Positions 31,308 to 54,654 are shown, numbered from the stretch's first letter. The stretch: 64,000 nt of DNA from IMGVR_UViG_3300040801_004034:157293-221292, one strand, 5' to 3'. Notes: generated from the sequence alone by a model not told the origin. A program made the numbers and translations.

Positions 31308-31442
31308 TTTGCTTATTACAATTATGTTTATCTGCTTGTTGAGCAAACATACTTGGACCTGTTGATGCTATTCTATAACCGCAATATTTACAGGTATGAA
31401 TATTCAATGTACCGTTTAACGATTTAAATTTGAAATCATCTC

Positions 31443-31898
31443 TCATGATGTAACAAAATCGATCAACTTTTCCTTTACAATTGCACTGATCTTTCCAGCA
31501 TCGATACTTGCGCCAAACTCACCTTTAATAGCACCGATAACTTTACCCATATCCCTGATCGATGTTGCACCTGTAATACTAATTGTCTTATCAGCAATCA
31601 TTTCATAGTCGCTTTCATCAACCATTTCAGGTAGCAGTTCTTTACAAAGTTCAGCTTTCACTGTCATGTCAGAAGCAACTGTTGGTTGGGTTTTGCTATC
31701 TGCAAATGTAACAGCAGATTCCAAATATGCCTTTTCCTCCTTCTTAATGAGAGCATAAATCTGTTCATCATTAAGATCTTTGTTAAGACGCGCTTCGCTT
31801 TCTTGAATAGCGCTTAAAATGCCTTGATATACAGTAAGCTTTTTATAGTCGCGGTCTCTACGAGCGCTTGTGATCTTATCCTGAATTTTAGTTTTCAT
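31443..31898 (-). CDS. GatB/YqeY-domain protein
   Basis: LNDEQIYALIKKE...ELLPEM...GATSIRDMGKVIG...DAGKISAIVK. Confidence 0.85.
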   Translation of the reverse strand: MKTKIQDKITSARRDRDYKKLTVYQGILSAIQESEARLNKDLNDEQIYALIKKEEKAYLESAVTFADSKTQPTVASDMTVKAELCKELLPEMVDESDYEMIADKTISITGATSIRDMGKVIGAIKGEFGASIDAGKISAIVKEKLIDFVTS

Positions 31899-34179
31899 GT
31901 AGTTATTATATTATAGTTCCTCTAAACTAATACCAAGCCCCGCGCGCATATTAGAGCTCAATGAGCTTCTAATCCGCCTCTTAAGATTTTTGATAAGTTT
32001 TCGTATTTCATGTTTATTAGTGTGCGTATCCTCACACGCATTACAAGCCCTAAATGTGAGTTTTTCTCACTTTTTTCTGCGGGTATTTTGGCCGTTTCGG
32101 CGGCTCCTCGAACCAGACGCTTCTGGTCAATTCCGTTCGCTCGTGCCTCGCTCTCTCCATGCCAGAGCTATTTGTTCTGGAGAAAAGTTTCTTTGTATTC
32201 TCGCCACTCTTCCATCGCTTGAGAGATTAGCCGGATGACTGTGCCTACTTCACCGTCGGATTCGACCGCCTGCCAGACTCCTGGCCATGTCGGGTGGTCG
32301 ATGCGATGTATATCGAGCGTTGCCCATTCGCATGTAGAGCCTTGGCAGGTTCCACGCGATAGTTGAAATCCATTGAGTCGCAGTCCTTCTGCGATCATCT
32401 CCAGCTCACCCCACCCAGAACCAACCGGATGGATCAACCCCTTAGCCTCGGCCTTATCTTCCCAATATTGGTGTTCTTCATCACTCATGTTTTCTATATC
32501 TTCTATGTTCATTTGTCGGGGTTATCCTCCTCGGAGTTCTCAAGAATAGAAAACTCGCAGTAGTTGTTTTCTTGTCGACCTGTCTGTGTGAGCGAAAATC
32601 TAAACCCCTCCGGTTGTCGCAATCCCATTTTGTCGATCTCTACCCTAGCCAATCGAAACATCTTATTTCTCTTGCCGTTGTAACCAATTGCTGCAACTTC
32701 ATCGTCTCTAAACGATAGTCGGTATGTGGTCGTTTTTATGGTTTTTAATATCATAGTGTTGTCGGGTTTAGAACCAGCCGCCATACTCAATGCGAGGTAG
32801 GCCGCTGGATTTTCGTTAATATTTATCTACCTCTGAGCTGCTAGGCTCGCATCGAGTAGGCTCGATGATGTAATGACTTCATTATTCGATAGTATAATTG
32901 CTGCGTATTTCATATTATGAGAAGTTTATTTGGTTTTGATAGATTTCTGTATCACCTGGATCAGCTGCTAGACCTAGCGTTTCACTTTTTCCATAACATG
33001 TACCATCAATGCTGATGAATCCAGCTGATACCGGCTCTCTACGAACTCGGTGCCAATCACCATGCGTCTGGTTCTTAATAGCACCGAGCATCTCTGCCAT
33101 AGCATCATGATCAACACTTTTCGGAAATGTAAATATCTCAAGCTTATTATTATCAGGATTTTTTGTTTTGATGTATTTCATATTAAAAAACTTTAAAATT
33201 GCGAACCGCATATGCTACAAAGGCAATGCTAATACCGACTCCTACAATGAAGCCAAACCAAAAAGATCCGTTAAATATCCATTGTGATATTGTAATTTCC
33301 ATCTTATTCGTGTCCGTATAGTTCGATTAAAGATGTGCGAAGCTCATCAGCTGTTAGACCTTCTAGTGCTATTGAAATACCGGTCAGGAAACTCTTCTTA
33401 GTGAGGTCATCAATTGTCTTAGATGGTCCCATGTTATGTAATTTATGGTTTACTACATCAAGTAGCTTTTGTTGTTCATCTGTTAGCATATCTGTATTAT
33501 ATTATAGTTCCTATGACCTAGACCATTTTTGCTGACGAGTAAGCAAGCCATTGTGCTTAGCATTGCGCTTAATCATCTTGAGCTCTTGTTGCCCTTGCTC
33601 AAGTGTGATATCACCATCATGAATACGCTTCATAATTGCAGAACGTACTTCCATTGAATCAGCAATCTCACCACTACTATCAGCTTTGTTTAGTGCACTT
33701 CGCTTTCGTGATCTGGTTTCATCATTCATAATTCAGTTATTGTTATCTTATTAGTTACTATATATTTGACATTGACAGCAAACTTGCACTTACAGACGCA
33801 ATTGATTGTCATGTGATGTTCATCTGTAAACACATCACCATACTCGGTGCTATCAAAAGGTGTTAGAGCACTGTAATGATATTCGCATTGTGGACACTGA
33901 AAGTCATATTCATCTTTAACACGAGGACCGTATGTATTTGCATGCTCTTTGCTCTTGATTCCATCATACAACTTGTTCAGATTATCACTGAAGACAAACC
34001 GATCACATACAAAGAGGTTGTATTGTCGGATCTTAGATACCATCCAACCTGTATCAGGATCTTGCGGGTTGATATACCAGTCCTTGTTATCATTGAGCTC
34101 ATACACCCTGTACTTACCACGAGGTAACCATGATAGCGCACCATTACTATCCATCGGACATGCCATGAATCGTTTTAAC

Positions 34180-34473
34180 TCATTCATCTTTTAAAATATC
34201 TATGTTGTGGTGCATGATTACACTCAGTGATTTATTTGCAACTGTCCACCAACCACAGCACATCTGTTCATGAAGAGAATAATAACCAATGAACTCATCA
34301 TGAAGCATGTCATAGAACATCTTATCGAAGATTCTCTCAGCATGTTGTTCATTGCATGCATGAGGTGGTAATAAGCCCAGCTAGTTGCGCTTCTGCATCC
34401 GCTTTACAGATTTGCGTTTTACATCGATAATCGCTGGTAACCGGATAAACTCCTCATATGTCATTTCGTTCAT
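34180..34473 (-). pseudogene. hypothetical protein with in-frame TAG at 34381-34383
   Basis: 98 codons overlapping both neighbours; KRMQKRN*LGLLPPH... Confidence 0.55.
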
Positions 34474-35075
34474 AATACTTCTACATTATCATATGCATGA
34501 TAGACAATACCTGTTTCCTTTTCAGTAAATAGCAATTCAAGATTACCACAACTTAATTCCACCTTGTCCACCACAATTGTTCGTTCACCAGATTCATGTC
34601 TACTCCAGTGCCATCCCAGGTACCCACGAATAGCTTTACCTTCGAATGTGCTCTTTGCCCATGCAAGGTATGAATCACGCATTGCTTTATGCGCTGTCTC
34701 TTGTACTTGTTTAATGCTTACGTTCATGAGAAGATCTCCGTATCACCTTTCAAATCAAAGATTGTACCGCAATCAGAGCCCTGCGCGTATGATTCATGTC
34801 CATATTGAGCCCCGCCACAGTGGCGAGTCACCTTATAACCTTTCTGAGAGATACCAATAGTATATTCAGCATCATCACCACCTCTTGCGCGCTCATATTG
34901 GAGCATGGCAATAAACTCAGCCAACTCATATTTTGTCATCCGTGCACTGGTAACAGAGACGAATGGTTTAATCTTAGCTAGTCTTGGACCTGTTTTACTC
35001 ATATAACTAGTATATGGTAGTTCCTTAAACATGGAGAAACCTTCCATTTCTGAAAGGCCTTTCCGTAAAGCTAGT

Positions 35076-35438
35076 TTACATTACTGCTCTGCTTCTAATA
35101 AGAGCCTGGCTCATGAGCTTGCTCATGTGAGTTAGTGCTTTTTGAAGCTCTTCAGAGTCTATATTTCTCTCATCAATTGCCATCTCTGCTTCACCATGAA
35201 GTAGATCATAGAAGAACTGCTCTGGTTCTTCAGCAAGAGTCTTCATTAACTGAGCTGCAACAAGATCGAAATACTCTTCTTCAGGCGATATACTATCAGG
35301 CTCTGAGTAGCGCGGATCTCGAGGGTCATATTTCGGCTTACGTGCATTTTCCTGTGCTCGTAGTAAATCTGCTGGTGCATCTTCTAAACCACTGTAGGCT
35401 TCGTAAATTAGTTTGCTGTCATTGTTGATTGTGCTCAT
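35076..35438 (-). CDS. acidic late protein, possible internal head protein
   Basis: TAAATA at 35444-35449; N-terminus NDSKLIYEAY. Confidence 0.55.
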   Translation of the reverse strand: MSTINNDSKLIYEAYSGLEDAPADLLRAQENARKPKYDPRDPRYSEPDSISPEEEYFDLVAAQLMKTLAEEPEQFFYDLLHGEAEMAIDERNIDSEELQKALTHMSKLMSQALIRSRAVM

Positions 35439-35449
35439 AATATTATTTA

Positions 35450-35677
35450 ATGCGGGGTAGGGCGGGATCTGTATAATCTGCGAATAGCGGGGGTCTTAGT
35501 AATCTGCGAGGGATCTGCTCCCGGTTTTTTGTTTGGCATGCAGATATAACCCTAGTTCCAAAACGGCTCAGATAGTAAAGCGTTCCAACGGTTAACCTTC
35601 TCAGACCGGGTTCCTCTGAGCACAAAAGTTTCTCTAGTTCCAACCCACCTCTCGCTAGACCACTTTGGTTCTCTCTG
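35450..35677. other. GC-rich non-coding element with phased GTTCC and ATCTG/CAGAT motifs
   Basis: GTTCC at 35555, 35582, 35610, 35637 (27/28/27 bp); ATCTG x4 at 35467-35517 facing CAGA(T) x3. Confidence 0.5.
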
Positions 35678-35845
35678 CTACTTCCTCTTTCTATTCGCCT
35701 TACGCCTCCTTCGCTCGTTCTTATTCTTTCTTTTGTTGTTAGGCTTACCCACCTTAGGACTAAATGCATTCATCCATTTACTGTAGTCAGCATTAGCTCT
35801 AGCTAAGTCATGACCACTGAATGAAAATGTAGGCGCTCCGCTCAT
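35678..35845 (-). CDS. small protein with Arg/Lys-rich C-terminus (start revised)
   Basis: promoter at 35852-35867; ends KRKNKNERRRRKANRKRK. Confidence 0.6.
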   Translation of the reverse strand: MSGAPTFSFSGHDLARANADYSKWMNAFSPKVGKPNNKRKNKNERRRRKANRKRK

Positions 35846-38437
35846 GTTACTATTATATGTCTGTTCCATTACCTGATAGCAGCTTTGATATCACCTATAG
35901 TGTTTACACCTTGCTGTGAGTTATCAATAGCGATCACTTCTGTATCGTCTGGTAGTAAAGATGCAATTGGGTTAGTCCATCTCATTCCATTACTACGAAA
36001 AGCTACCTCTTCTACATTATCTGGATCGTTTTTAGTTGGCGCTTTGACTGCAAATGTTGTACTCATATGTATATTATATCAGAGTTCCATTACTTAGCTG
36101 GCGGCCATGTTAGGCCTGCCTCTTGTAGCTTAGGTACATCTTCGTCAGCAATATCGAACTCATCCTGAGTAGTGTAGTTAGCTTGTTGATGCTCTCCTAA
36201 TGTGTCGAAGACCATCTGCTCTGGAATGAACCACCCATAGTCATTACTACTACCTTTAAAGTACACCCTGACCATATTACGGTCATTGATATGATTGACT
36301 GATGCGCTCTTATGCTCTGTGATTTGTATTACCATAATTATCCGATCATGCTTGATGCTCTACACTCTTTGCTTCCTGGACCTGCTTCTGGCGCAGGACA
36401 AACTCTTCTACCTCGTCAGCTCTGATGCTGTACGTCGGTATGTGACGATCATGAAACTCCACTCGATAGAACTCACCTTGTGTGGTTGTTAGCGTGACTT
36501 CTTTTAGCTCGATTGTATTTGCTTTGCTCATGTCGATATTATATCAAGGTTCCATCACAGCATCGGATTGTGCGGAACGTCATTATCTTCTTCCTCACAA
36601 ATCTCGTGATAGGCACATCCTCTTAGTACGCTATTAGCTTTGTACCGAACTGTACCGGTGAATGCTTCTCGCTTTTCCTTCTTGAGTCCAGCTGCTCGAA
36701 CGTATCGTTCAGCTTGCTCCCGGGTGTTAAATGTCGCAACTATCTCTTCTTGTTCTTCAGTCTTGAACTGACCTCCGATATGTGAAAGAAAAACGTGCTC
36801 TGTTATACCTATTAGCTTTACCATGTAATTATTATATCGTGGTTCCGTGAGTGCTAATAAACCGCTACCATACGGTGGCTGAACATTGCAGAGAGCTCTC
36901 TCAGATTGAGTGGCTTCTCAGCGATCGTCAAGAACGCATAACCTTCCAGCTCTTCCTGAACCTCTTCTAAATAAACCTCATCACCTTCCCAATCACCTGA
37001 CTCATCATTGAACGTCACGCGCTCAAACGTCATCAAATTGCTATTGCGATCGAGCGTCATGTCGATGTCTTCGTTCTCGCCTAGGTGCACAAACACCATC
37101 ATATCGTTGCTGCGCATTGCTGGTAATTCATTTTTCATATTCATAACAATATTATATGATGGTTCCAATACGGCTATCCGATCAGTCCGACTGCGTTTGC
37201 AATCATCACTGCTACAAGCACGACAATACCGAACAGTACAACTTTTGCTATTGTTTTGAAGCTCCAACTATTATTTGGTCCAATCATTTTATTTCCCTTT
37301 GTTTTTGTTATTTGTTTATGCAGCAGTCTCTTCTACTAACTGCTCTCCATGAAAGCGTCGTGCCCACACCTCTTTGATATGCTCTTTCTGCTCTCTTGTA
37401 GATGAAAGGGATACGTACTGCAATCGTAGCAGGCGCTTGTAACCGCTAAGGTCTTCTACGATGTTGCCATCACCATCGTGCTGCTTTTCATGACGAACCA
37501 GACCTCGGCCCTTCTTCGAAACATACTCAGCGAGGAACTTCTCGTAACTGTTGTCGTATTTCTTCTCAATCAAGCCAGCTAGATACTTGTGATGGAATGC
37601 ATTTTCCTCACCGGTAACAGTGCACTTGACTTTGACCGTGCAGTTAAAAGCTTGCTTACCATCAGCAAACTCGTAGTTGTATAATTTTTTAGCTTTCTTT
37701 TCCATAATGTTAAACGTCAATTGCAAAGTACATCACCATCGCTGCATAGGCTGCAACTACTGTAATGACTGCTATGTGAATGATTAAATGTTTCATACTG
37801 ATATTATATCGAGGTTCCGAAAAGGTACTCATCATATGCTGCCTCATCAGAAGCTTCATATTCTGCTTTATGTAGTGCAATTTCATAATCTGCTTCATCT
37901 CGCAGAAATTGCGCTGCTTCAGCTGCTTGCCATGTATCAATATATTGATCGCGATCGTGTTCTTCTAGATGTGCCATACCAATATTATATCAGAGTTCCT
38001 AGAGGGAGTTACGTTTAATGCATCCTGCTTGGTACTGAAGACGATCTGTATCTTTCAACCAATTCGCAACGAATGTCTTGAGAGGGTACTCAGCATACAA
38101 TCCATCTTTCCTTCCGCCGATGTGATGAAAGCCATAATGAGCATTCACATCAATACCTTCGCTGGTAAGAAAGTCAAGATGGGTTCCGAGATCCCATTCC
38201 GGATGAATCAGAGTGCTTTGAGCTACCGAAACTTTTGCTAAATCGAATGTCTGTATTTGCGTTTTTATCATACCAATATTATATCAGGGTTCCGAGATGT
38301 GATTAGCACCATACTAGCTGTTCAGCATCAACATCTAGCTTACGAAGATACTCTTCACGTGCATATCGTTCCTGACGAGCCTTCACTTTACGATCGCGCT
38401 CTTCTTGAGCTAGTCGACGAGCTTCCTTCATCCTTAG

Positions 38438-38486
38438 CAACTTGCTCGTTACAAGTAACGAGCAAGTTGAACAACTTGCTCGTTAC
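38438..38486. repeat. 15-bp inverted triplication X-X'-X
   Basis: CAACTTGCTCGTTAC aa GTAACGAGCAAGTTG aa CAACTTGCTCGTTAC. Confidence 0.9.
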
Positions 38487-40161
38487 CAACAATGATCTCA
38501 GCTGCAAGTTCCTCATCGAGCGTCTTCAACCATGCTCGGAACTCCTCGCAATCTTCCTTTGATGTCTTAACGACAGCCCATGCATCGTTAAAGTCAACAC
38601 TCTTATCGAACTTTACGATATGACCAGGGCTGCAACCGCATGAACATCCAGCATTGCGTGAGTAATGAATACTCTTCACATCAGAAAGAATTTCCTTGAT
38701 TGCTGCATTAACTGCACGATTGCACTTGCGAAGAACTTTGTTCCAAGTCTTGCACTTAAAGTCTAGATTATAAATCTTCTTTTCATTGAACCAATCATCT
38801 GCGATCGTCATCACACTTTCTTCCTCTTTAGGTGTCTCAGTGTAGATGACCGCTCGGGTGCTGTGTGAAGGAGCCCAACCATTGCGGCTCTTTGACATCA
38901 TTTTGTTTCGAATTTCTGCTGTGGTGTTATTTTTCATACCAATATTATATCAGGGTTCCAATACGGCGATCAACCTGCGTCCCAACCATATGGCTTGCAA
39001 AGGAACGGCTTACCATCTACATCAACCAGATCACCTACTGATACGCTATACAGAGGACCATCATCAGCTCGGAACTTTTCTTCGAAGCGAGCTTCTTCGC
39101 TGTCCATGTCCATAAAATCACGTGGCTTGTTTGTAGCTGTGAACACCCACTCAGCAGCCTTTTCCTGCTCGACCACTCCGTCTGGAAGATCATACTCAAA
39201 TACTAAGTGGCGAGTTAGGTTATCGAGCTCCTCATCGGTTGCTCCAAATGCTTGGCGTGTGTCGGTTGGTCGGTATAATTTAATTTTCATACTGCGATTA
39301 TATCAGGGTTCCGAGATGTGGCTAGAGTCGAATCTTGATCATCTGTTCCAACCAAGCATGGACCTCTTCAATAGTGTCAGCATCTTCTGCACCTTCAACA
39401 TGATCCATAAACACATCCTCATACCATGTCTCAAAGCTTCCGCTCATCAACAGATTGTAAACGCCTTTTGCAACTTCTTCTGTGGTGTGTGTATCTTTCA
39501 TATTGATATTATATCGAGGTTCCTAGAAGTGATAGAGCGTTGAGCTCTTGTTGTCCTTATCGATGCAATTCGTATGCCAATTGTGCATGTAAGCTGGGGT
39601 ATACTTCTTGCGATGCTCATCGTATTTGTCTTTGCGGCAAATACGCACCTTACCGTAGAAAGTTCCTAGAGCGCCATACCCGCGATCCTTTTGCGTGACT
39701 TTTGTCTTGAACTGTTTGCGATTCTCTTTAAGCCAATCAGTAGCTTCCTTTCTACTCTCAAAGCCAAGATCGTACATGAGGTAGTTCGTATTGCGTCCAG
39801 TGATGCCTTCTGCATAGGCATTTGTATAAGTCATCCAAATAATATATTTCATACAATTATTATATCAGGGTTCCGTGAGGGCTACACACCTGGCAGCTCG
39901 AACTTCACATACCAGTGTGATTGATTTGCGAGCGATGCTCCTCCTCGGAACGGCTTCCATTTATCGCCGGTAGCAAGAATGATTGCTTCTGGGAAAGCTT
40001 TCCTTACTTTCTCCTCGAGCATCTCTGATGTGTACCCATTTCGGTAAAAGTAACCTTTGCGTACTGTAAAGATGCCTTTGCTCTTGCTGACGTGGTTTCC
40101 GATCTTTTCTTCGACTTGACGTGATGTAATTTTCATATGGTTATTATATCGAGGTTCCATG

Positions 40162-40671
40162 CTAGATGTTGTGGATGATCTTACCTGCAATTTTGATCTT
40201 GCGAAGTGATGATATTTTGTAATCACGTTCTGGTATTTCCTTCTCGATGCCTACTGCTTGCTGAGTAGCTGTTGGTGCTGCTTTAGGCAAGAATGGCTTT
40301 AGTTCCGCTAGAGGAATCTCAACTCCAGTCTCCTTATCGATGTAATAAGTTTTGCCGTTCAGCTGTTGAGGCTTGACGCTCAAGTATTGCTCACCTTTAT
40401 GATGAATGATGAAGCGATGTTCCTCATCACGAACACCCCAACGACGAGGCTTAGCTTTGAAAATAGCTTCCTTCCCCTCACGTTCGAGCTGACGATTAAC
40501 GCCTGCTTCGTAGTTAGTTCCGATCAAGCCGCCAACGAATGCAACCTTGATGACGCGTCCAAAGTATGGATTGTTCGTCTTGTTCATGCGAGGCTCGGTA
40601 TGAGCTTCGAATGAGATTGGTGTAGTGCCATTATTGGCATTTTCGATGATGTGGTGTACGATGTTTTTCAT
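40162..40671 (-). CDS. hypothetical early protein
   Basis: 169-aa ORF with own promoter at 40678-40693. Confidence 0.7.
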   Translation of the reverse strand: MKNIVHHIIENANNGTTPISFEAHTEPRMNKTNNPYFGRVIKVAFVGGLIGTNYEAGVNRQLEREGKEAIFKAKPRRWGVRDEEHRFIIHHKGEQYLSVKPQQLNGKTYYIDKETGVEIPLAELKPFLPKAAPTATQQAVGIEKEIPERDYKISSLRKIKIAGKIIHNI

Positions 40672-40912
40672 AATCAGATTATATCTAGGTTCCTAGACGT
40701 CCAGTCTGTATGCTGTAACTACTAGATCATCGATCTCACTCTCTTTCTGAGCAATTTGCTTCTCTAAATAAGCTAGTGCATCATCAGGTGCATCCTTATT
40801 CATCGCAAGTGTATGATAATATTCATGCAAGATGCTCAATTGTGCCTCAGCATGCTCCAATTTTTGTAGTGGTGTCTTTTCCATACCAACATTATATCTA
40901 GGTTCCAAGACA

Positions 40913-40948
40913 TGAAAGGACTCGAGCCACACCACATAACTCGAGTCC
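40913..40948 (-). terminator. probable intrinsic terminator
   Basis: GGACTCGAG-13nt-CTCGAGTCC followed by TTTCA on the minus strand. Confidence 0.5.
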
Positions 40949-42163
40949 CGACCCCCTTGGGTCAACCACCTTTTGCCAACCACGGCACATGAAAATTATT
41001 CTTCCGGTTCCTTAAAAATTTCGTCTTGCTCTCCTGGCAAAAGACCAGTCATAAGAAATTCTCGCTCAGTTGCATTGAGCATCGGAAAGGCTTCCTGAAT
41101 CATCATGCCGTCTTTCCATTTTTTGTTGCACTCGAGAAACTCTTGCGAGCTAATATTGAGATGCATCTCATTTGTTTTGCCTGTCAGTGGATTGGTTTTT
41201 GTGATCTTCATAATGTTATTATATTACTGTTCCGTTTCAGCAAGACGCTCGTTATATTTTGCAAGAATATGATCTTCAACCCTCTTGTATGAACCCCAGC
41301 AACTTGATGGCACATGATTGTAGATGAATACAATGAGCTTTCTGAGCTCATCACTCTCTTGAGGACAATTATCATATCGTCCGTAAGCACCGAAGAGATC
41401 ATTTGCAAGTACTGCATTGATAAACCCTCCTGGCTCATAACCATTCTCGATATAGTCCATCATCGTCTGAGCAAACCGTTTCGGACACTTGTTGTAATCT
41501 ATTTCAAACATATATTATTTTATCAGGGTTCCGTCACCTAAACGTTGTTCGGTCCAGTACCAACTCGATCAGATACTTTATCGAGATAGTCATAAAGGAA
41601 TTCAATTTGCGCTAATCGAGCGAGATCCATATTGTTATCGAGATTCGCTTCGCGTTCGAAACTGTTGAGTTGTTCCTCGAGAGCTTCAAACATATATGTC
41701 ATATGCATCTGACGCTCATCAGTTGACATTTGTTTGTACTTTGTAGTGTATTTAATTTTCTGTGCTTGATTCATACTACGATTATATCAGGGTTCCGAAA
41801 TTAGAACTCCTTCTTAAAGCTGATGCATGTGACTGTTTGGCCGCGCATCCATCGAGCGGAACGATTGATCTCATGATCATATACCTCGAATGTATAAAGC
41901 TCGAATGCTTTGGTGAGCATGTCTTTGATCATGCGCTTTGCTGCATCATCGTAGTTACAATTCGTTTTGATGCGAACTGTTCCGTCTTTGCGTACATCTC
42001 GGAAATAATTTCCTGGTGTAACAGTGCGTGTTGACGCGATTAATACTCGAATGTCTCTAATGGTTGGTGCTGTAATCATACTATTATTATAAGAAGGTTC
42101 CAAGAATGGAAAGCTGCCAGCTCTTTCGAACTGACAGCCCAAGTCGTTTCCGCCCTCCATTCA

Positions 42164-42676
42164 CTAACCGAAATGCGCTGTCAATACTTTGTTCATGCAT
42201 ACTCGAAGTTCCTTCAAGTCAGCAATCAGCGCATCTCGTGAGTAAAGTTCCAATACCTTCACTACATCATGCTTGTACGAATCAAGCTTGCTTACTAGCG
42301 TAGGTTTGTCTTTGATAAAATCGTAGTAGTCACCATCAGCTTTGACTGTTCCGTCTCTCTCGTTGATAGCATACTCCATGTAATTACAGACCTCTTTGTC
42401 ATAACCAAGTACTTCACAAACGGTGTAAATTCGCATGCGATGACTCAGATCGCAATCACCGGTAACAAGTTCCTTAGCAAGGTTGTAACCGGAACGTTTT
42501 GTTGGCCAAGGACCATCTTTTACATATTTAAATGCTCCTTCTTCAACTTCCAAATTGTTCCAGAACTTCCAATGATCGTATGGGTAAGTATTCTCCCATG
42601 CCCCATCGGAGAGCTGCCCGAGAATCTCATGTTCGAAAAGAGCTTTGAGCCGTTTTGGTAATGTCAATATATTCAT
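42164..42676 (-). CDS. hypothetical early protein
   Basis: 170-aa ORF; promoter at 42712-42727. Confidence 0.7.
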   Translation of the reverse strand: MNILTLPKRLKALFEHEILGQLSDGAWENTYPYDHWKFWNNLEVEEGAFKYVKDGPWPTKRSGYNLAKELVTGDCDLSHRMRIYTVCEVLGYDKEVCNYMEYAINERDGTVKADGDYYDFIKDKPTLVSKLDSYKHDVVKVLELYSRDALIADLKELRVCMNKVLTAHFG

Positions 42677-42950
42677 AATGTGTGCGGTTGTTATTGCTTA
42701 ATTGCAACTATATTATAAAAGGGTTCCGTTCTGGCTAACCCCTAAATTGATGCAAGTAGCACGATACCTAAACCGATTGCGAGGCCGATTAGCCAGCTAC
42801 CTAGCAAGGCACCTATGCAAGTTAAAAAGGCGACAAATGCGAGAGCGTTTGGATTAATATTCATAATGTGTTCCGTGTTCTAGATAATGTTTAATTGTTC
42901 CTGCTTCCTCTTCATCGATGCAGTGACTGATTAAAGGATCTATAATCATT

Positions 42951-43064
42951 TGTTCAATACAGGAACGTTCCTGTTCCAGTTCCGTGGCGGCGGCTATTAC
43001 CCTTACTGCCGCCGCCACTTGTTCTATCTGTTCCTGTTCCACTAAACGTTCCAGTTCCAGTTCC
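42951..43064. repeat. cluster of 8 GGAAC boxes flanking an 11-bp GC hairpin
   Basis: minus strand GGAACT GGAACT GGAACG..GGAACA GGAACA..GTGGCGGCGGC-13nt-GCCGCCGCCAC GGAACT GGAACA GGAACGTTCCTGT. Confidence 0.85.
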
Positions 43065-43425
43065 TACACTCGTTGTGGATCGAAAATATGGAACACTGTC
43101 ACTTGTGTGTTCCGCATAATATCACTCACATTATACTTCGGGTCATCTTTCAAGGAACTGATGCCAAACCCTCGCAGGTATTGAGAGATTGCCAATGTGT
43201 GGCCAGCTGTAACAACTGCACTGACATTCAATCGTGATAGTTCCTCTACTACCTTCTCGAGGATCGATAACGGAACAACCTTCTCGATCTTAATACGATA
43301 CCGACCATCTTGATGACGATCATTATAATGAGTAACACAAGTCAAATCGACTCCATGTTTCTCAATTGCATTGCGAACTTCTTTATATGTGATGTTTTTC
43401 ATATCGATATTATAAAAGGGTTCCA

Positions 43426-43950
43426 TTACGCTGCAATCAGCTCTCTAACAATCAGCTTGCCGAGAGTTTCATGCTTCTTTCCGATCATGTACCGATCTCT
43501 GTTGATCTTGTTGAGCTGGAACCCTTTTGGTATGCGAGCTTTTTTCGCATAGATGACTCCTGTTTCAACATTCATGATAGCATATAAGAGCTTTTTACGA
43601 CTGCGAGCAACAACATGTTCTGTAATATCTGTTTTGCCATTTGCAAGACGTGTAGGAGATGCTCCAATTTCTCTACAGATGCGCTTCCAACGATAGTCAT
43701 GCCTGCAGCATTCACCATGACGATGATAAGCAAGTGCGTGAGCGATCTCATGCAGCATCGTATCGAGAACCTCTTCCTCTTTACCAACACGGCACAATGT
43801 TTGATTGATTGCGAGAGTGCGATCGCGGTAGCGGCATTGACCGTATGTACGATAAGCACTCTTCTTTAGCAACCGCGGGCGCCATCCATGTTTGTCGAGG
43901 CCGTGCTGCTCAATTAACTTTCTGTACGTTGTTAGTGGTGTCATCATCAT
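43426..43950 (-). CDS. SprT-like zinc metalloprotease (start revised)
   Basis: YGQC, DTMLHEIAHA, HDYRWKRICREIGA; promoter at 43957-43972. Confidence 0.85.
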   Translation of the reverse strand: MMMTPLTTYRKLIEQHGLDKHGWRPRLLKKSAYRTYGQCRYRDRTLAINQTLCRVGKEEEVLDTMLHEIAHALAYHRHGECCRHDYRWKRICREIGASPTRLANGKTDITEHVVARSRKKLLYAIMNVETGVIYAKKARIPKGFQLNKINRDRYMIGKKHETLGKLIVRELIAA

Positions 43951-43996
43951 ACTACGATTATATCTGGGTTCCAAAAAGGCAAAACCATTTAAGATC

Positions 43997-44157
43997 ATCG
44001 CAAATCTCTATAGAGGCGAGCCGCTAAGCTCGGGTTTTAACCCCTCAGTATCAGTAGGTCGATGCAGTCACCTATCATCAGCTTTAATTTAAAGACGAGC
44101 TGGTTCGATTGCGTCTCCATCCGCGTTTAGGGTCTGTGATGGGTTCGACCTTGCGAT
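43997..44157 (-). ncRNA. candidate 161-nt structured ncRNA with own early promoter
   Basis: promoter 44163-44178 not followed by ATG; 5' ATCGCAA pairs with 3' TTGCGAT; internal stems AGGTCGA/TCGACCT, CCATC/GATGG, AGACG/CGTCT, GAGG/CCTC, CGAGC/GCTCG. Confidence 0.7.
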
Positions 44158-44423
44158 AAATTATTGTATCAGTGTTCCTATTCAACAACTGCTTCAATGC
44201 CATGATCAACTGCTTCACTGACCTTAACACCATTACGCATATGGTTAAGAGCAATCTGCTGCGCTTTGTTCATCTGTGTTAGTGTTAGCACAACAGCAAA
44301 GTCATTGCGTGCAACTTGTTCAATTGTCTGTAGGCTGGCGTCTCTAATTTTCATACGGTTATTATATTGTGGTTCCATGCACATATTTAATGTGAACAAC
44401 CGATTAAATATGCATCCATAATA

Positions 44424-44681
44424 TTATCGATTAGTTGCGAAGCGAGGAACAAAGCAGTTCTCAACCACTCCAGTTCGGCGGTTCATGTTTGTGACAATAC
44501 CACAAATGTCATGCATAAATTCAACTCGTGGAGCTTCATGTAAACGCTCCCAATTCATTCCCATATCATCTGCATTGAGCAGATCCATGACAAGTGTCAT
44601 GCGGTCAATTTTGATGCCCATCTCGGTGAATTCATCTTCAGCGCGATCAGCTACTTTGGTCATTATTTCTAGTGGTCTCAT
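44424..44681 (-). CDS. DUF6874-like small phage protein
   Basis: MDL...FMHDICGI...NCFVPRFA. Confidence 0.55.
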   Translation of the reverse strand: MRPLEIMTKVADRAEDEFTEMGIKIDRMTLVMDLLNADDMGMNWERLHEAPRVEFMHDICGIVTNMNRRTGVVENCFVPRFATNR

Positions 44682-45829
44682 ACTCAGATTATAAGAAGGT
44701 TCCTACCTGTGCTTGACTGCTAATGTAACACTTGCATGATAGTTACAAGGCATGACCTGTACGCTATGTACATTAACTGGCTCGGAAAGTTCCATCCATT
44801 GCTGTAATGCTGGAACTAAATCTTCATTTGGATCATCCCATGTACCTGTATTGATATCAAAGCTGATGTTCACGCTTCTAATTTCGCGATTAGGCTTAGG
44901 TAGTTCTATTTCCTTACCTTGTTCAAAGCGAAGACCATAGCATGATTGCGAAGCAAGAGCAATTGCGATGTCAGCAACATGACCTTTAAATGTTCCAAGC
45001 TGCTTAGTAGTGCGACCTTCACAGTCACCTTCTGTTGTAACCTTCCATATACCTTCTGGAGGACCGACAGTGTCTTGCATTTTGTTCCAGATATCACGCT
45101 GTCGTTCGACAGCACTATCTCGGCGTTTAAGTTCCTGAGCTAGCTGCTCAGATGTAAATTGTTTAAGGCTATCCATATTAGCCTACGATCTTATATTCGT
45201 CGCGCATGCTATCTGCTAATGACATCTTGACCGACTTAAGAGTGATGCCCGGAACTTTGCATAGTGCATATTCTTCACGTGCACGTTCGGTCACAAGCTT
45301 GTTAAATTCTTTCTGTGTGATGGTTGTTTTCATAAGTGGTATGTTAAGAGGGTTCCATTATGGCTCTTTACGAAGAGATGGATGACATGTCTCATTAAAG
45401 CCTTCAAACCATGCAGCATTTTCGAGCTCATTTTGTTCGACCTTCTTAGTCATCTCTGGTGTATCATGTCTTCTATGACCTAAACGAAATGGTCCACCTG
45501 GTGTGTAATCCCAGTTCTCAGAACCATCAAACTTAAGACCGGTCAGGCGACCATCTTTGTATGCTTTAATGTTTGATTTCATGTCGCTATGTTAAGAGGG
45601 TTCCAAGATTAATCATCACCGAATAAGTTGTCATTGTCCCATTGATCACAAGCACGAACTAGATCAGTGATGACCTGCTCACGACCAACATTGAATGCGA
45701 AGCGAATGAATGTTAAACACCCATGATCATATACACCTGGTATGTTCCGGCCGCGTGCTTCAGCGAGTGATTCGATTGCTTGTTCGTATGTGATTGTTTT
45801 CATGCCTCTAGTATAGAGAGGTTCCAATC

Positions 45830-47050
45830 CAGCTCAGAACGGAACAGTGATATAATATGTGTACAGCCAGATCGTGTCGTGAGCGAAATGCAGAGCCCGA
45901 GGGGTTGGCGAGAACTCCCTTGAGATATGGACCTGCTCCATCTCGGAAAAAAGGAACTGTGATATAATTGATGTGCTCCACCTACCTGCCTAACAAGGAT
46001 TGCCGGGATGGAAGGAGCAGAGATCTAGAGCTAGAGAGCAAACTACTCACCCTAGAGCGGAAAAGACCGGATGGGTTGCTAATGAAGAGTTTATAGGCCC
46101 CCACGCCTAGGCGGATCCAAACGGTCCAGCTATGCTTCTCTATAGAAATCCAGCTAAAAATGCTGGTAATGCGCCAGGTGCATAGGGAGTTAGAAGATTC
46201 TAACTTCAGGGTCGCCCGTCCGGATTCTCGCCCGGGTGAATTTACGCCCGTTTTGCCGCTCTGTAACTCGTTGAGAGGGTATGAGTTTACAGCCGATCCT
46301 GGCACGTAGTTCTGGAACCATGATATACTAGTGTTTTAATTTAACAGTGAGATAGCAGCCATGTAATAGATACACATAATAATATACGTAGACGTGCATA
46401 TGAAGCGCTATATATGAAGCGCTTAGGGCTCTCCGAGAGCCACGTAAGGATATATACGTGGGGTAATAATAAATGCCCGGGATAGCCAGGACGAATCTGC
46501 TATTGCAAGCGGGCTCAACTTGTGCGTATAGCTAGAAAGGAACACCTGCGCGGGAGATCGCGAGAGAAAGTGCGGGAGAGATAGCGCGCAGTGCGATAAG
46601 AGAGCGAGCGCGGGTGGGAGGGAGAAAATTTGAGCGGGAGACCTAACCAAATACCCGCTTAGATTCTATCATTTCCGTGCCCTCATATACCTCTCCTCAC
46701 ATAACCCTCTTGACTTTTCATACCTTGCTTAGCCTCTCCTCTAGGCTATTGCTCACATCAACAACAACCCTGCATCCATCATTAGTAGATATTACATTCA
46801 CACTTATATGTTCATCCTCTATCTCCACACCATGATTTTTCATCATGCTCTTTACCCTCTCTTTTATACCGCTTTTAAAATTATCATCTACCATTTTATT
46901 ACTCTTTCTATTAGTATTGTTATTGATGTTACTATTTCTAATATTACTCTTTCTATTGTTATTAGTATTGTTGTTATTAATACCCTGCGGGTGGGCTCAT
47001 TTCCTTCACTGGTGAGATATCGGGCTGTATACTAATGCCATTCCAGTTCC
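45830..47050. other. 1.2-kb non-coding region: candidate origin or genome-terminus region
   Basis: three plus-strand GGAAC promoters (45841, 45953, 46314); ATATGAAGCGCT x2; G/purine-rich GCGGGAGA repeats switching to a pyrimidine-rich tract near 46650; AT-rich ATTACTCTTTCTATT x2. Confidence 0.5.
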
Positions 47051-49628
47051 AAAAATACTTCCACACATCTTTCTCTTTTCTACACCATATCAATACCATA
47101 ATTATACTTCAGTTCCTTTTTGTATACACCATCCACACACCATCTCTTTTACTCAATGAAACACATTCAAACAACATCTTACCATTCACAATTTCATATG
47201 GTACGCCAGCTACAATAAGTATTGCACATACTTCATCCTCAGTCAAGTCACAAACATATTCCTTTTTACATGCTTGTTCACACATATTTAAAATGCTTTT
47301 AATATCATCAATCTTCATTATATTACCCAGATAATCTTTTTGTTTTAATTAAACCATTTGTATCTCTATAAACCATGAACCGGTGTGTTACAACAATACC
47401 AAATCTCACACTATTATACACTCTATATGATCCACACTTAGTCTGTGTGAAATCAAATTCAGCAATTGCATGCTTTGGTACAATAATTAGTCTCTTGTTA
47501 TCATCTCTATAATGGTATTCATCTGTGTATTCCACCACATGCTCTGATTTTGGATTACATAACCCCCAGTGACGCAAGTTACCTATGAATACATTTTGTG
47601 TTTGTATCCAGTGGTCTTGACCAATAATCTTAATCTTTACAGTCAGCTTGTGTACATCTTTACGCTGAACTTCATAGAACCTGTGTTTAAAAAATTGTTT
47701 GATCTTATTCATCCACCGGAACATAATATGTTTCAACTACTGTGCGGGTGCGCTGCTCTACCACCTTGGCACCATCCAATATTTCGCACGGCATAACACA
47801 ATCATACCAATCATTATCACCATCTGCATGTACCTGGTAAAAGCTCACGAACACATCACATAACTTAGCAACCTTTGGTGTGATTGAATACCATCTATGA
47901 TTATCTGTCTCACCATTAGTCACTGATTCAGTTTCAAACATCAGCATAGATGCTAGACCCTCATCACTACACACTTCATTTTCTAATTCAAAATGTTTCT
48001 TTATCAGTTCTCTTATATTCATAATTGTATTATACCTCTGTTCCTTTTTCCTCAATATGCTTCTTCACTATCCACAGATCATCACCTATTTGTCTTAACC
48101 ATTAACTCTTATGTGCTTACTATTATTTTCCAGTATTTCTACCATGTATCTTCATTACTTCGCGGAAGCTCCTCTGTCTAATTCTCTTGTTCTACTATAC
48201 TCTCTCATGGAACCCCTGGTGGGAACAGCTATTATTCATCAACCCATAGCAAAATATCGATGATACACATGATACACACATAAAACCAAATAATAATATA
48301 TATCCAACCTTCTACTAAATTAATAGTAGGATCATCTGAGATGAAGTCAGGTTTTGAATAACATAACAATACCATTACAGCAAGTGTATAAAGAATATTA
48401 GTTTTCATAATTAACCTAACGTACAACTTAACCCGATAAGGAACCATCCGATAATACCTAACATATACACTGTCCCAGCAGCGCTATCATCTGCATCGCT
48501 CAGTGGTTTTTTATCAAGCAATGATGATAATGAGATTGTAACATGAAATGTTAGTGCCCAAATCAGAAGGGGTATAAAATTGATTATATCCATCACTTAT
48601 TATAAGGTTGTTCCTTCTTACATTCACTTGCTGGTACTACTTTTCTGAATCTCTACATATAATATATATGCTACAATTTCGTTCATAGTGTTGGGAGCTC
48701 CCATCCATCCTCGTTCATGATGTCGGCGGCTTCTTTGGCACCGGCTTGTGAGGTGAATAATGATGTAAGATCTTGTGAAAGAATATGGGGACCAGCACAC
48801 CGGAGGCGGTGGCGGGAATCGAACCAGATGGAATACCGAGAGTAAGTTGCTTCATGCTTCGCATTCATCTCCATAGCCAGCGAGTAGTATCGCTGGTAGA
48901 AGGTGAAGAACTTGGAAGCTTGTTCGGCAGCATTTCGGGTTGGGAAGGTTCTACCAGCTCTTGGGTGATGAGGGCGGTCGCCAGCACTGTGACAGATCCA
49001 ACCATTATAGGTAACTGTATACATACCACCTTTCGGATCCCATGGTGTGACCGGATCAGGTGTTTCTTTAATAATCCTGTTAATTTGAGCTTTAACTGAA
49101 GCAATACGTTCAGTCTGACGAGCAGACTCTTTTGTAAGTTCACCTAGCTGTTCTAATAGTACTTTCATTTCATCTTTCATAATTAATAATTCCTTTCACA
49201 ACCATTAAAGATTATATTGTTACAATCTTGGTTTTCATGCTCTACTTGATTGTATGCATAGTGTTCTTCATCACCATTTTTGTATTGAGCCTCTATTGAG
49301 ACACTCATTTCTGTCCCATCATCATACTCGACCGTGAAATGATATGAATATTCATCTTCTCTATTTTTCATCTTGTGTAAAATATACAAATTCTGTTATT
49401 GGTTTATTGGTATCCTCATCAATTATTAATATCCAATCACCTAAACCTTGCTCGAAATGTTCGTTTTTAATTTCATTACGGATATATTCATCCATTGCTA
49501 CTGTATACATTATAACAGCAATAACCATAATCGGAAGCGATCCCATCTGTGTGCTTTCTGCACCAGCACATGCTAAGATAACAAAGAATATCATACTAAA
49601 AATAAAAAGAAATAACATCATAACAACA

Positions 49629-49976
49629 TTATATTAAGGTTCCTGTATGATCGCGGCGTTCATAAATGATAATACCTGCTCTTGTAGCTTCTTTCATCAT
49701 TGAAGCAGTACCCTTGCCTCCAGGAAATAAAACAACAGCATCAGCATATTGTGCCATTTCTCTATTACGAATAGGACCTGCAGCACGCCCATGCTTATCC
49801 CAATCAGCTTTGAATACTTTAATAGGTATACCCTTAGCCTGAGCGAATGCTTCACCACCACGATCTGCTCCTGTTGCACCACCACTCACAACTTCAGTTA
49901 TCAGGAGACTAGATAGGAATTTAACATCGTCATGATTAAGTTGATAATCTCTACCACCTGCAATGATTGTTTTCAT
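49629..49976 (-). CDS. YspA-like SLOG (DUF2493) protein
   Basis: IIAGGRDY, VVSGGATGAD, ADWDKHGRAAGPIRNREMA, GKGT. Confidence 0.85.
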   Translation of the reverse strand: MKTIIAGGRDYQLNHDDVKFLSSLLITEVVSGGATGADRGGEAFAQAKGIPIKVFKADWDKHGRAAGPIRNREMAQYADAVVLFPGGKGTASMMKEATRAGIIIYERRDHTGTLI

Positions 49977-53264: not shown

Positions 53265-53267
53265 AAT

Positions 53268-54634: not shown

Positions 54635-54654
54635 GAAAAATTATTCTGATCAGA

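What the first reader, a model, noticed from the sequence alone, without database searches (positions are those of the whole stretch)
35852..45825. Array of self-contained promoter+leaderless-gene cassettes built on GGAAC-N5-TATAAT-N6-ATG
Seen: about 50 copies window-wide, 28 in this 10 kb. Spacing is invariant at 5 bp, there is no evident -35, and the ATG falls at the expected +1. The upstream gene's TAG stop often forms the first G (TAGGAAC at 11820, 15562, 33511, 37999, 39523, 40693, 44178, 44703). Some copies share 24-25 bp identity (38269-38293 = 38935-38959; 38278-38301 = 39297-39320). Known: repeated early-promoter cassettes (PeSLs) drive gene shuffling in RB49-like phages. Inference: an unusual promoter class, read by a phage activator or atypical host sigma at about -22 to -18, that doubles as a recombination unit for an array of host-takeover/anti-defence genes. 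It also corrects many ORF starts.
Basis: partly seen in the sequence, partly recalled or inferred. Interest (0 to 1): 0.8.

Follow-up and report, generated by a model that had tools for sequence, protein, structure and literature searches.

The report
Leaderless promoter-gene cassettes in T4-like phage
An uncultured T4-like phage places the same 25-base promoter directly against the start codon of dozens of small genes, so their mRNAs should have no leader and no ribosome-binding site, and more than a hundred related viral contigs do the same.

Summary
GGAAC-N5-TATAAT occurs 44 times in the window (0.05 expected), 42 times on the coding strand. In 33 copies an ATG sits exactly 6 nt after TATAAT, and 32 of those 33 ATGs open ORFs of 50 codons or more.

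The logo shows no -35 element. It shows a GGAAC box at -22..-18, TGA at -15..-13, a consensus -10, T at -1 and A at +1. That is a -35-less, extended -10-like promoter fused to the start codon.

Shine-Dalgarno sequences are at chance level throughout. The first 40 nt after the motif ATGs are unusually unstructured. T4-late-like TAAATAAT boxes also abut start codons.

The window is the last 64 kb of a 221-kb T4-like contig from a microbial mat, with no cultured relative. The cassette recurs in over 120 other viral stretches and in no cellular genome.

In relatives, homology begins exactly at the first G of GGAAC, which supports promoter-gene modules that get exchanged. The cassettes fail the PeSL definition: no -35, no SD, and a stem-loop in only 3 copies.

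Still untested: the transcription start sites, what reads GGAAC, the host, and the anti-defence role of the ORFans.

The parts
35852..44703 (-). 23 exact GGAAC-N5-TATAAT cores of the dense array. The 16-nt cores start at 35852, 36073, 36538, 36831, 37151, 37803, 37984, 38278, 38944, 39297, 39508, 39859, 40143, 40678, 40891, 41218, 41781, 42086, 42712, 43409, 43957, 44361 and 44688. The ATG lies at core start minus 7, except at 42712.
   Evidence: logo
41517..45825 (-). Near-match cores inside the array: 41517-41532 (TAAAAT, ATG at N5), 44163-44178 (TACAAT, no ORF follows), 45341-45356 and 45589-45604 (TAACAT), 45810-45825 (TATACT).
35678..45803 (-). About 30 small ORFs (42-174 aa) served by the array. 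22 start at a motif ATG in my gene set, and 39882-40136 does too. The ORFs are unrelated to each other.
   Evidence: no paralogs; ORFans
7381..33511 (-). Exact cores left of the array, in front of replication, nucleotide and RNA-repair genes: 7381, 11805 (N5), 13903, 15547, 16628, 29683 (22-nt leader), 31905, 33496.
18041..35024 (-). One- or two-mismatch cores with ATG at N6: 18041, 18621, 19063, 23146, 25903 (GGCAC box), 27556, 35009.
47101..62823 (-). Exact cores right of the array: 47101 (fires into an ORF-free stretch), 48029, 48599 (N5), 49628, 50822, 51036 (N7), 54579, 56171 (N8), 57266, 60309 (34-nt A/C-rich leader), 62808 (leadered). There is also a near match at 61737.
45841..45856 (+). 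Exact core on the opposite strand with no ORF behind it. It is the head of a ~90-nt candidate small RNA.
45953..45968 (+). Second opposite-strand exact core. It is followed by a 346-nt ORF-free, strongly folding stretch (45975-46320).
46314..46329 (+). Third opposite-strand core (-10 is TATACT) in the same ORF-free region.
42677..42711 (-). 35-nt leader between the core at 42712 and the ATG at 42676. Its first 15 nt are invariant in four divergent relatives, where it precedes an unrelated gene.
54601..54634 (-). Hairpin plus T-run (intrinsic-terminator-like) directly upstream of the core at 54579.
42108..42139 (-). Terminator-like hairpin directly upstream of the core at 42086.
40914..40949 (-). 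Terminator-like hairpin (GGGACTCGAG arms) directly upstream of the core at 40891.
2871..35449 (-). T4-late-like TAAATAAT boxes 1-4 nt before start codons on the - strand: 2871-2878 (portal), 4088-4095 (gp15), 19847-19854, 35442-35449.
231..63865 (+). TAAATAAT boxes 2-6 nt before ATGs on the + strand: 231, 727, 929, 8280, 62876, 63858 (first base of each).

Best explanation
Each copy is a complete early-type promoter of an uncultured T4-like phage, fused to the start codon of the gene it serves.

Anatomy. A sigma-70-family holoenzyme would read a consensus -10 (TATAAT, -12..-7), usually preceded by TGA at -15..-13 (extended -10). A GGAAC box sits exactly one helical turn upstream (-22..-18) and takes the place of the missing -35 element. 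Transcription would then begin at the A of ATG (T at -1, A at +1). The mRNA has no 5' leader and no Shine-Dalgarno sequence, and is translated from its 5'-terminal AUG.

Why one promoter per gene (inferred). An internal cistron without a Shine-Dalgarno sequence is poorly served on a read-through transcript. So each small gene of the hyperplastic region carries its own promoter. Other genes are translationally coupled through stop/start overlaps or have A-rich leaders. Late genes use T4-late-like TAAATAAT boxes that are also placed against the ATG.

Modularity. Because promoter and gene form one unit bounded by the same 16-25 bp, the units are exchanged between genomes at the motif.

Shown here: the anatomy, its statistics, its conservation in more than 100 viral contigs, and the module boundaries.

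Inferred: the start site, leaderless translation, and the early timing.

Who reads GGAAC is open. My estimate is about 0.4 for RNA polymerase itself (beta' zipper or sigma domain 3, Z-element-like), 0.35 for a phage or host accessory protein, and the rest for a phage sigma.
For: Frequency and geometry.
- 44 copies against 0.05 expected; 42 are co-oriented with the genes.
- The N5 spacing is invariant.
- ATG lies at N6 in 33 of 44, and 32 of those 33 open real ORFs.

Logo.
- No -35 element.
- T-15 in 20/33, G-14 in 19/33, A-13 in 27/33.
- T-1 in 29/33, a pyrimidine at -1 in 33/33, and A at +1.

Function as a promoter.
- 33 of 37 TATAAT-N6-ATG sites carry GGAAC.
- Copies also stand before ORF-free stretches and before 22-51 nt leaders, as promoters can but ribosome sites cannot.

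Translation signals.
- The first 40 nt of the predicted mRNAs fold at -1.1 kcal/mol against -4.5 for random stretches (p = 2e-13).
- SD-like 4-mers before the 87 other genes number 9, against 9.8 +/- 2.8 by chance. 53 of 88 of those genes overlap the upstream stop or lie within 5 nt of it.

Not spread by duplication.
- There are no paralogs among 138 proteins.

Conservation.
- Portal relatives at 61-65% identity and other contigs hold 111 distinct copies, 72 with ATG at N6.
71 new loci hold 307 copies, 78% with ATG at N5-N7. All 32 loci with at least 3 copies are one-stranded.
- Control phages had 0 copies in 135 kb.

Module boundaries.
- Homology between L006, L010, L013 and L004 starts at the first G of GGAAC.
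- A different gene sits between two motif copies in L006 and L013.
- 10 of 33 homology endpoints in motif zones lie within 3 nt of a motif, against 3.6% expected.

Position of the box.
- The -22..-18 position matches the Z-element, which can replace -35 when the -10 is strong (PMC3173786).
Against: - No transcript data exist. The three RNA runs from the same sample hold none of the stretch, and no RNA run was listed for a relative.
- The host is unknown.
- No cellular genome among 185,579 species shows more than chance single hits to the cassette. Host promoters are therefore not visibly of this type, which leaves room for a phage-specific factor.
- Reported Z-elements are loose (AACCT, AACAT) and give effects of 2-6 fold. 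Here GGAAC is invariant, and its AAC is offset by 1 bp relative to the -10.
- 11 of 44 copies lack an ATG at N6.
- Only three terminators were found, so read-through transcripts must exist, and their internal genes would then need another way to be translated.
- The homology endpoints are not independent events, and motifs coincide with gene boundaries. The boundary statistic therefore cannot separate recombination within the motif from selection for intact promoter-gene units.
Confidence: 0.8

Rival explanations
1. The promoter and leaderless architecture are the same, but GGAAC is the binding site of a dedicated protein rather than a contact of host RNA polymerase. That protein could be a phage-encoded activator, a sigma-appropriation factor, a phage sigma or a shut-off repressor. 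The cassettes would then be delayed-early or middle promoters.
For: - GGAAC is invariant, far stricter than any reported Z-element.
- No cellular genome is enriched for the cassette.
- T4 gives a precedent for a box read by MotA with AsiA (own knowledge).
- The variable positions are slightly more alike within a contig than between contigs: 0.524 vs 0.492, reached by 1 of 200 permutations.
Against: - No other promoter class that could drive an immediate-early factor is seen in 64 kb. The classical -35/-10 scan is at chance, and the Bacteroidetes-type pattern occurs once against 1.5 expected.
- No sigma or known transcription-factor Pfam domain appears among the genes called across the window.
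- The rigid one-turn spacing to the -10 fits a single rigid reader such as the holoenzyme.
- A box centred at -20 lies where sigma domain 3 and the beta' zipper already sit.
Confidence: 0.35
2. The motif acts in RNA, not DNA. It would be a Shine-Dalgarno-independent ribosome entry or RNA-processing site inside long polycistronic transcripts.
For: - No SD sequence is present anywhere, so some other initiation signal is needed for internal genes.
- The motif-to-ATG distance is fixed in 75% of copies.
- Terminators are few.
Against: - The conserved bases are exactly the sigma-70 -10 consensus with TGn, plus a pyrimidine at -1 and a purine at +1.
- Copies occur before ORF-free regions, on the opposite strand, and 22-51 nt ahead of ATGs.
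- Three copies sit immediately after terminators, where a new transcript must start.
Confidence: 0.06
3. The repeats are primarily recombination sites of a cassette-capture system, like integron attC sites or a homing system. Their resemblance to a promoter would be secondary.
For: - The region is an array of unrelated small genes, each flanked by the same short site.
- Homology breakpoints in relatives lie at the site.
Against: - The motif has no dyad symmetry.
- No integrase or recombinase domain appears among the genes called across the window.
- The motif also precedes conserved core-adjacent genes and non-coding regions.
- Orientation is strictly co-directional with transcription.
- The exact run shared through GGAAC by pairs of copies is 6 bp at the median and 26 bp at most.
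Confidence: 0.03
4. The promoters belong to an alternative sigma class: sigma-54 (GG-N10-GC geometry, TGGCAC-N5-TTGC) or ECF (GGAAC as a -35 element).
For: - GGAAC-N5-T resembles the sigma-54 -24/-12 layout, and one copy reads GGCAC (25903).
- GGAAC is a common ECF -35 core (own knowledge).
Against: - The downstream element is TATAAT, not TTGC.
- With sigma-54 geometry the start site would fall past the ATG.
- No TATAAT or other conserved element lies 16-17 bp from GGAAC.
- Sigma-54 needs ATP-dependent activators, which is implausible for about 55 promoters.
Confidence: 0.02

Closest known systems
PeSLs (promoter-early stem-loops) of RB49/phi1 and other T4-like phages (Arbiol 2010, PMC2839356; Comeau 2014, PMC4122927)
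   Same: Both are repeated early-promoter cassettes concentrated in a hyperplastic region, each in front of an ORFan. The upstream stop codon lies inside or next to the cassette. Replacement breakpoints between relatives fall at the cassettes.
   Different: PeSLs have a full -35/N17/-10 sigma-70 promoter, a stem-loop terminator and a Shine-Dalgarno sequence before the start. Here there is no -35, no SD and no leader. A hairpin is present at only 3 of 44 copies, and a GGAAC box is present instead.
Leaderless genes with the -10 box next to the ORF (Deinococcus-Thermus, PMC12340547; Actinobacteria; lambda cI; Thermus phage phiYS40, Sevostyanova 2007, details from memory)
   Same: A TANNNT-type -10 lies at a fixed short distance from the start codon. 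There is no SD and the AUG is 5'-terminal.
   Different: This is a T4-like phage in which early-type and late-type promoters alike abut the ATG and SD is absent genome-wide. Those hosts use SD for their leadered genes (GGAG motif). The invariant GGAAC partner is not described for them.
Z-element / beta'-zipper promoters (Yuzenkova 2011, PMC3173786)
   Same: Both are spacer elements at -22..-18 containing AAC that can replace the -35 element when the -10 is strong. This defines a '-10/Z' promoter class.
   Different: The Z consensus is loose (AACCT, AACAT) with effects of 2-6 fold. Here the box is invariant, includes GG, and its AAC is 1 bp closer to the -10. Dependence on the zipper is untested.
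Extended -10 (TGn) promoters
   Same: TG lies at -15/-14 in the family consensus, the -10 is at consensus, and no -35 is needed.
   Different: TG is present in only about 60% of the window copies, whereas GGAAC is present in all.
T4-type late promoters (TATAAATA read by gp55)
   Same: The second motif class, TAAATAAT, stands before the portal, gp15, gp13 and prohead protease genes.
   Different: Here the box lies 1-7 nt from the start codon, so late mRNAs would also be leaderless or nearly so. T4 late genes have leaders with SD (own knowledge).

Membership tests
PeSL regulatory cassette | Sigma-70 promoter with both a -35 and a -10 box, about 17 bp apart | tested here: not met
   No information content upstream of -26. 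The classical two-hexamer scan found 41 sites against 32 +/- 4.8 by chance.
PeSL regulatory cassette | Stem-loop or terminator as part of the cassette | tested here: not met
   Strong hairpins with T-runs occur at only 3 copies (54579, 42086, 40891). The terminator scan is at chance.
PeSL regulatory cassette | Shine-Dalgarno sequence and start codon at the 3' end | tested here: not met
   Only 6 nt separate the -10 from the ATG. SD-like words are at chance level genome-wide.
PeSL regulatory cassette | Enriched in a hyperplastic region, in front of ORFans | tested here: met
   Density is 2.3 exact copies per kb in 35.8-45.8 kb against 0.4 per kb elsewhere. The proteins have no paralogs and mostly no family.
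PeSL regulatory cassette | Insertion or replacement breakpoints between close relatives lie at the cassettes | tested here: met
   This was seen in relatives, not in the window's own array. Homology starts at the first G of GGAAC in L004, L006, L010 and L013, and a gene is swapped between two copies. 10 of 33 endpoints lie within 3 nt of a motif. The near-identical strains of the window phage differ only by a 34-bp indel away from any motif.
PeSL regulatory cassette | Mini-circles formed by recombination between cassettes | not testable with these tools
   Only assembled contigs of 2018 runs were available, and no DNA reads could be laid.
Leaderless gene (-10 adjacent to ORF) | The -10 hexamer ends 5-7 nt before the start codon and no SD is present | tested here: met
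   In the window, 36 of 44 copies have the ATG at N5-N7. In 71 further loci the figure is 78%.
Leaderless gene (-10 adjacent to ORF) | The mapped 5' end of the mRNA equals the first base of the start codon | not testable with these tools
   No RNA run holds the window or L021.
Leaderless gene (-10 adjacent to ORF) | An accessible, unstructured 5'-terminal AUG | tested here: met
   Mean folding energy of the first 40 nt is -1.1 kcal/mol against -4.5 for random stretches (p = 2e-13). AAA is the preferred second codon.
Z-element promoter (-10/Z class) | A conserved spacer element at -22..-18 with a strong -10 and no -35 | tested here: met
   GGAAC occupies -22..-18 if +1 is the A of the ATG.
Z-element promoter (-10/Z class) | A sequence resembling AACCT or AACAT in register with the -10 | tested here: inconclusive
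   AAC(C/T) is present, but it lies 8 rather than 9 bp upstream of the hexamer and is preceded by an invariant GG.
Z-element promoter (-10/Z class) | Activity depends on the beta' zipper | not testable with these tools
   This needs in vitro transcription with zipper mutants.
Extended -10 promoter | TG at -15/-14 | tested here: inconclusive
   T-15 in 20/33 and G-14 in 19/33 in the window. TG is the consensus in relatives.
Sigma-54 promoter | GG at -24 and GC (TTGC) at -12, with the start about 11 nt after the GC | tested here: not met
   The downstream element is TATAAT. With this geometry the start would fall beyond the ATG.
Bacteroidota sigma-A promoter | TTG-N19-TAnnTTTG | tested here: not met
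   1 match against 1.5 expected in the window. The consensus is taken from PMC9723704.

The most novel reading that the evidence does not exclude
A large, globally distributed lineage of uncultured T4-like phages expresses essentially its whole genome without Shine-Dalgarno sequences. Both early and late promoters are fused to start codons. The early class relies on a previously undescribed invariant core-promoter element, a GGAAC box one helical turn upstream of the -10. This box replaces the -35 element and is read either directly by RNA polymerase (a strong natural Z-type element) or by a new phage factor. The resulting promoter-gene units behave as exchangeable modules.
Probability: 0.35. 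Interest if true: 0.75.

Novelty: new variant of a known kind. Interest (0 to 1): 0.62.

Why it matters
- Annotation. The cassette gives a simple rule for gene starts in a widespread group of large marine and mat phages. Standard gene callers mis-start many of their small genes.
- Leaderless expression. It would be the first T4-like lineage in which leaderless expression is the rule for both temporal classes. That bears on how phages adapt to hosts that ignore Shine-Dalgarno sequences.
- A new promoter element. The invariant GGAAC box sits where only the weak, poorly defined Z-element is known. It offers a natural, strong test case for how RNA polymerase or an unknown factor reads the spacer and dispenses with the -35 element.
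- Genome plasticity. The exact coincidence of homology boundaries with the box extends the PeSL idea of regulatory cassettes as shuffling units to a very different promoter architecture.
- Practical use. A 25-bp element that supplies promoter and translation start together is a compact expression part.

Tried and rejected
- Megablast of the array against GenBank phages found nothing. Portal and capsid tblastn best hits are cyanophages at only 31-35% identity, so there is no cultured relative.
- Tandem duplication as the source of the repeats is rejected. There are no paralogs among 138 proteins.
- A host-genome search was done. One scan of 185,579 species with GGAAC-NN-TGATATAAT-N6-ATG gave 55 single hits, about the chance level. 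The only multi-copy contig, L044, is a phage-family fragment binned into a Flavobacteriaceae MAG.
- Host inference failed. The Bacteroidota-type promoter is absent. Atlas neighbours of YqeY lean to Actinomycetota only weakly. Thg1 and ThyA neighbours are viral or mixed.
- TSS mapping was not possible. RNA runs of the sample hold nothing, none was listed for L021, and read laying returned nothing.
- Near-identical strains from the same mats gave no informative indels.
- Relatives of two array proteins in viral contigs were too distant and lacked the motif, so they were used as negative controls.
- Concerted evolution of the variable promoter positions within genomes is only marginal.
- Rfam found nothing for the ORF-free region.
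- Two of the three candidate small RNAs fold no better than shuffles.
- Pfam and PDB sequence searches on the leadered 170-aa gene and other array proteins found nothing.
- Literature searches for the motif or for leaderless T4-like phages found no prior description.
- The phiYS40 paper could not be read.

Full report
**What is there**

GGAAC-N5-TATAAT occurs 44 times in the 64-kb window, where dinucleotide-preserving shuffles give 0.05. 42 copies are on the - strand, which carries 134 of my 141 predicted genes. The spacing between the two blocks is 5 bp in every copy; no copy has N1-N4 or N6-N20.

In 33 copies an ATG follows TATAAT after exactly 6 nt. Four more have the ATG at 5, 7 or 8 nt. 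Eleven one- or two-mismatch copies also have a start at N6. 32 of the 33 N6 ATGs open ORFs of at least 50 codons, against 24% of all ATGs on that strand. Conversely, 33 of the 37 TATAAT-N6-ATG sites in the window carry GGAAC at the fixed distance.

**Anatomy**

I aligned the copies on the ATG. Nothing is conserved from -62 to -27, so there is no -35 element. A classical -35/-10 scan of the array is also at chance. The conserved positions are:
- GGAAC at -22..-18, with C or T at -17;
- T-15 (20/33), G-14 (19/33) and A-13 (27/33), which is an extended -10;
- TATAAT at -12..-7 and A at -6;
- T at -1 (29/33, a pyrimidine in 33/33) and the A of ATG at +1;
- AAA as the favoured second codon.

The distance from the -10 to the A, together with the pyrimidine/purine pair at -1/+1, is what a sigma-70-type start site looks like. 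A ribosome-binding signal would not produce those features.

Upstream genes end inside the next promoter. The TAG shares its G with GGAAC in 7 cases. TAA or TGA falls in the extended -10 or inside TATAAT in others.

The first 40 nt after the motif ATGs are almost free of structure: -1.1 kcal/mol against -4.5 for random stretches (p = 2e-13).

**Genome context**

The window is the last 64 kb of the 221,292-bp contig IMGVR_UViG_3300040801_004034, assembled from a microbial mat metagenome.

It encodes T4-type portal and gp15 proteins, thymidylate synthase, DNA ligase, two RNA ligases, Thg1-like and CCA-adding-type enzymes, and many ORFans. Flanking loci add gp13, the prohead protease and gp23.

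The best portal and capsid matches among 50,697 GenBank phage records are cyanophages at 31-35% identity, so no cultured relative exists.

**Translation signals**

Of the 141 predicted genes:
- 44 start at an early-type cassette.
- 9 start at a TAAATAA-containing box.
- 88 start at neither. Of these, 53 overlap the upstream stop or lie within 5 nt of it.

SD-like words upstream of the 87 scorable genes among those 88 number 9, where random 15-mers give 9.8 +/- 2.8. The few leadered genes have A/C-rich, G-poor leaders.

The T4-late-like box TAAATAAT occurs 11 times, and 10 of these lie 1-6 nt before a start codon. Those genes include the portal and gp15 here, and gp13 and the prohead protease in the flank. 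Both temporal classes therefore appear built for leaderless or nearly leaderless mRNAs.

**Not a product of duplication**

No two of 138 window proteins are similar at E <= 1e-4. Thirteen of 20 array proteins have no PHROG match, and the rest match families of unknown function. The motif is therefore maintained in front of unrelated genes. This also means the proposed host-takeover or anti-defence role has no direct support.

**Distribution**

Portal relatives at 61-65% identity carry the cassette.

A pattern scan of IMG/VR found dense arrays in unrelated samples: L021 has 24 copies in 12 kb on the array strand, L036 has 12, and L015 and L035 have 9 each. Over these contigs there are 111 distinct copies, 72 with the ATG at N6 and T at -1 in 66 of 73.

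In 71 new loci (639 kb) there are 307 copies, 78% with the ATG at N5-N7. Every locus with at least 3 copies has them on one strand. Again there is no information upstream of -26.

The family consensus is aaAGGAAC-TCTGA-TATAAT-AATAGT-ATG-AAA.

Seven large phage contigs that share only a distant protein homolog have no copy in 135 kb.

A scan of one genome from each of 185,579 prokaryotic species gave 55 single hits, about what chance predicts. The one multi-copy contig is a fragment of this phage family binned into a Flavobacteriaceae MAG.

**Module boundaries**

L004, L006, L010 and L013 are 84-90% identical over about 12 kb. Their homology begins at, or within 3 nt of, the first G of the GGAAC that precedes a conserved 147-aa gene. 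Upstream of it, each carries a different sequence.

Between L006 and L013, homology also stops 11 nt after the preceding motif copy. A different gene therefore sits between two copies.

In motif-containing zones, 10 of 33 homology endpoints lie within 3 nt of a motif, where 3.6% is expected. These endpoints are not independent, and the motifs coincide with gene boundaries.

Homologous cassettes stand in a different order in L021 and in the window.

This fits promoter-gene units that are exchanged at the motif. It does not prove that crossing-over happens inside the motif. The exact run shared through GGAAC by pairs of copies is 6 bp at the median and 26 bp at most. Homogenisation of the variable positions within genomes is marginal.

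**Comparison with known systems**

PeSLs are defined by a full sigma-70 promoter, a stem-loop terminator and an SD sequence plus start codon. Here the -35 and the SD are absent. Only three copies (54579, 42086, 40891) follow a strong hairpin with a T-run. The cassettes work like PeSLs in genome plasticity but are not members of that class.

The fixed -10-to-ORF arrangement matches the leaderless genes of Deinococcus-Thermus.

The position of GGAAC matches the Z-element. That is a spacer element at -22..-18 (AACCT, AACAT), sensed through the beta' zipper, which can replace the -35 element when the -10 is strong. The Z-element is loose and its AAC is 1 bp out of register with the one here.

Sigma-54, ECF and Bacteroidota promoter types do not fit.

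I found no description of this motif, or of leaderless T4-like phages, in the searchable literature.

**What remains open**

No RNA data could be obtained, so the start sites are inferred.

No sigma or transcription-factor domain appears among the genes called across the window, but 157 kb of the genome was not examined.

The host is unknown, and the hints conflict:
- Absence of SD and the binned contig point to Bacteroidota.
- The TATAAT -10 and the lack of TAnnTTTG argue against Bacteroidota.
- The atlas neighbours gave nothing firm.

**Verdict**

The promoter-plus-leaderless-gene reading is well supported by sequence evidence, and I put it at 0.8. The recombination-unit idea is supported in relatives. 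The PeSL label, the activator or atypical-sigma claim, and the anti-defence claim are not established.

Noticed in passing
window 231, 727, 929, 2871-2878, 4088-4095, 8280, 19847-19854, 35442-35449, 62876, 63858; L038 9989, 13400, 16950: The T4-late-like box TAAATAAT lies 1-7 nt before the start codons of structural genes (portal, gp15, gp13, prohead protease). Late mRNAs would therefore also be leaderless or nearly so. The box's overall frequency is not above chance (11 vs 10.6), but 10 of 11 copies abut a start codon.
   Followed up: partly
window 45830-47100: A 1.2-kb ORF-free, GC-richer region carries three + strand copies of the promoter (45841, 45953, 46314) and one - strand copy firing into it (47101). 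The 346-nt stretch 45975-46320 folds far better than shuffles (z = -2.7, 0 of 100) and matches no Rfam family. L021 has two equivalent opposite-strand promoters, and the first transcript shares a box AGCCCrAGGGGTTGGsGAGrACT. These are candidate phage small RNAs.
   Followed up: partly
window 42677-42727; L021 3630-3715; L118 5655-5745; L139 13850-13945: One promoter copy per genome is followed by a conserved leader beginning ATAGTTGCAATTAAG, invariant in four divergent phages. It precedes a 170-aa protein in the window but an unrelated 103-aa protein in the relatives. It looks like a conserved operator or RNA element rather than a gene-linked feature.
   Followed up: partly
window 43975-44178 (-): A variant promoter (TACAAT) overlaps the TAG of the upstream gene and is followed by about 190 nt without an ORF before the next cassette. 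Its fold is no better than shuffles.
   Followed up: partly
whole window: Shine-Dalgarno-like words upstream of genes are at chance level. 60% of the genes without a promoter overlap or touch the upstream stop codon. Leaders, where present, are A/C-rich.
   Followed up: yes
window 38452-38472: The only difference among six near-identical assemblies of this phage from the same mats is a 34-bp indel at the 3' end of gene 38449-38937, giving 162 or 171 aa.
   Followed up: partly
window 42960-43080 (-): A run of GGAAC words lies inside a coding region (GGAACTGGAACTGGAACG and similar, encoding Gly-Thr repeats). It is unrelated to the promoters but inflates raw GGAAC counts.
   Followed up: no
window 14809-22306: A cluster of RNA-repair-type genes: a CCA-adding/PolyA_pol family enzyme, a Thg1-like enzyme, an AAA_33 kinase-like protein, two RNA ligases and a metallophosphatase. 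Several have their own GGAAC promoter. No tRNA gene was found in the window.
   Followed up: no
window 32000-46000: G+C is 42-44% in the cassette array against 34-38% in most of the rest of the window.
   Followed up: no
L044 (CBFHVY010000069.1): An 11.7-kb contig with 10 promoter copies and a homolog of the window's metallophosphatase is filed in a Flavobacteriaceae MAG. It is probably a mis-binned phage fragment and gives only a weak host hint. It also holds tandem paralogous cassettes (MKKLSDTYK...).
   Followed up: partly
contig ends (L112, L113, window 64000): Three independent assemblies (221,292, 221,420 and 201,405 bp) end at about the same place as the window. This suggests a fixed genome end or a terminal repeat there.
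   Followed up: no
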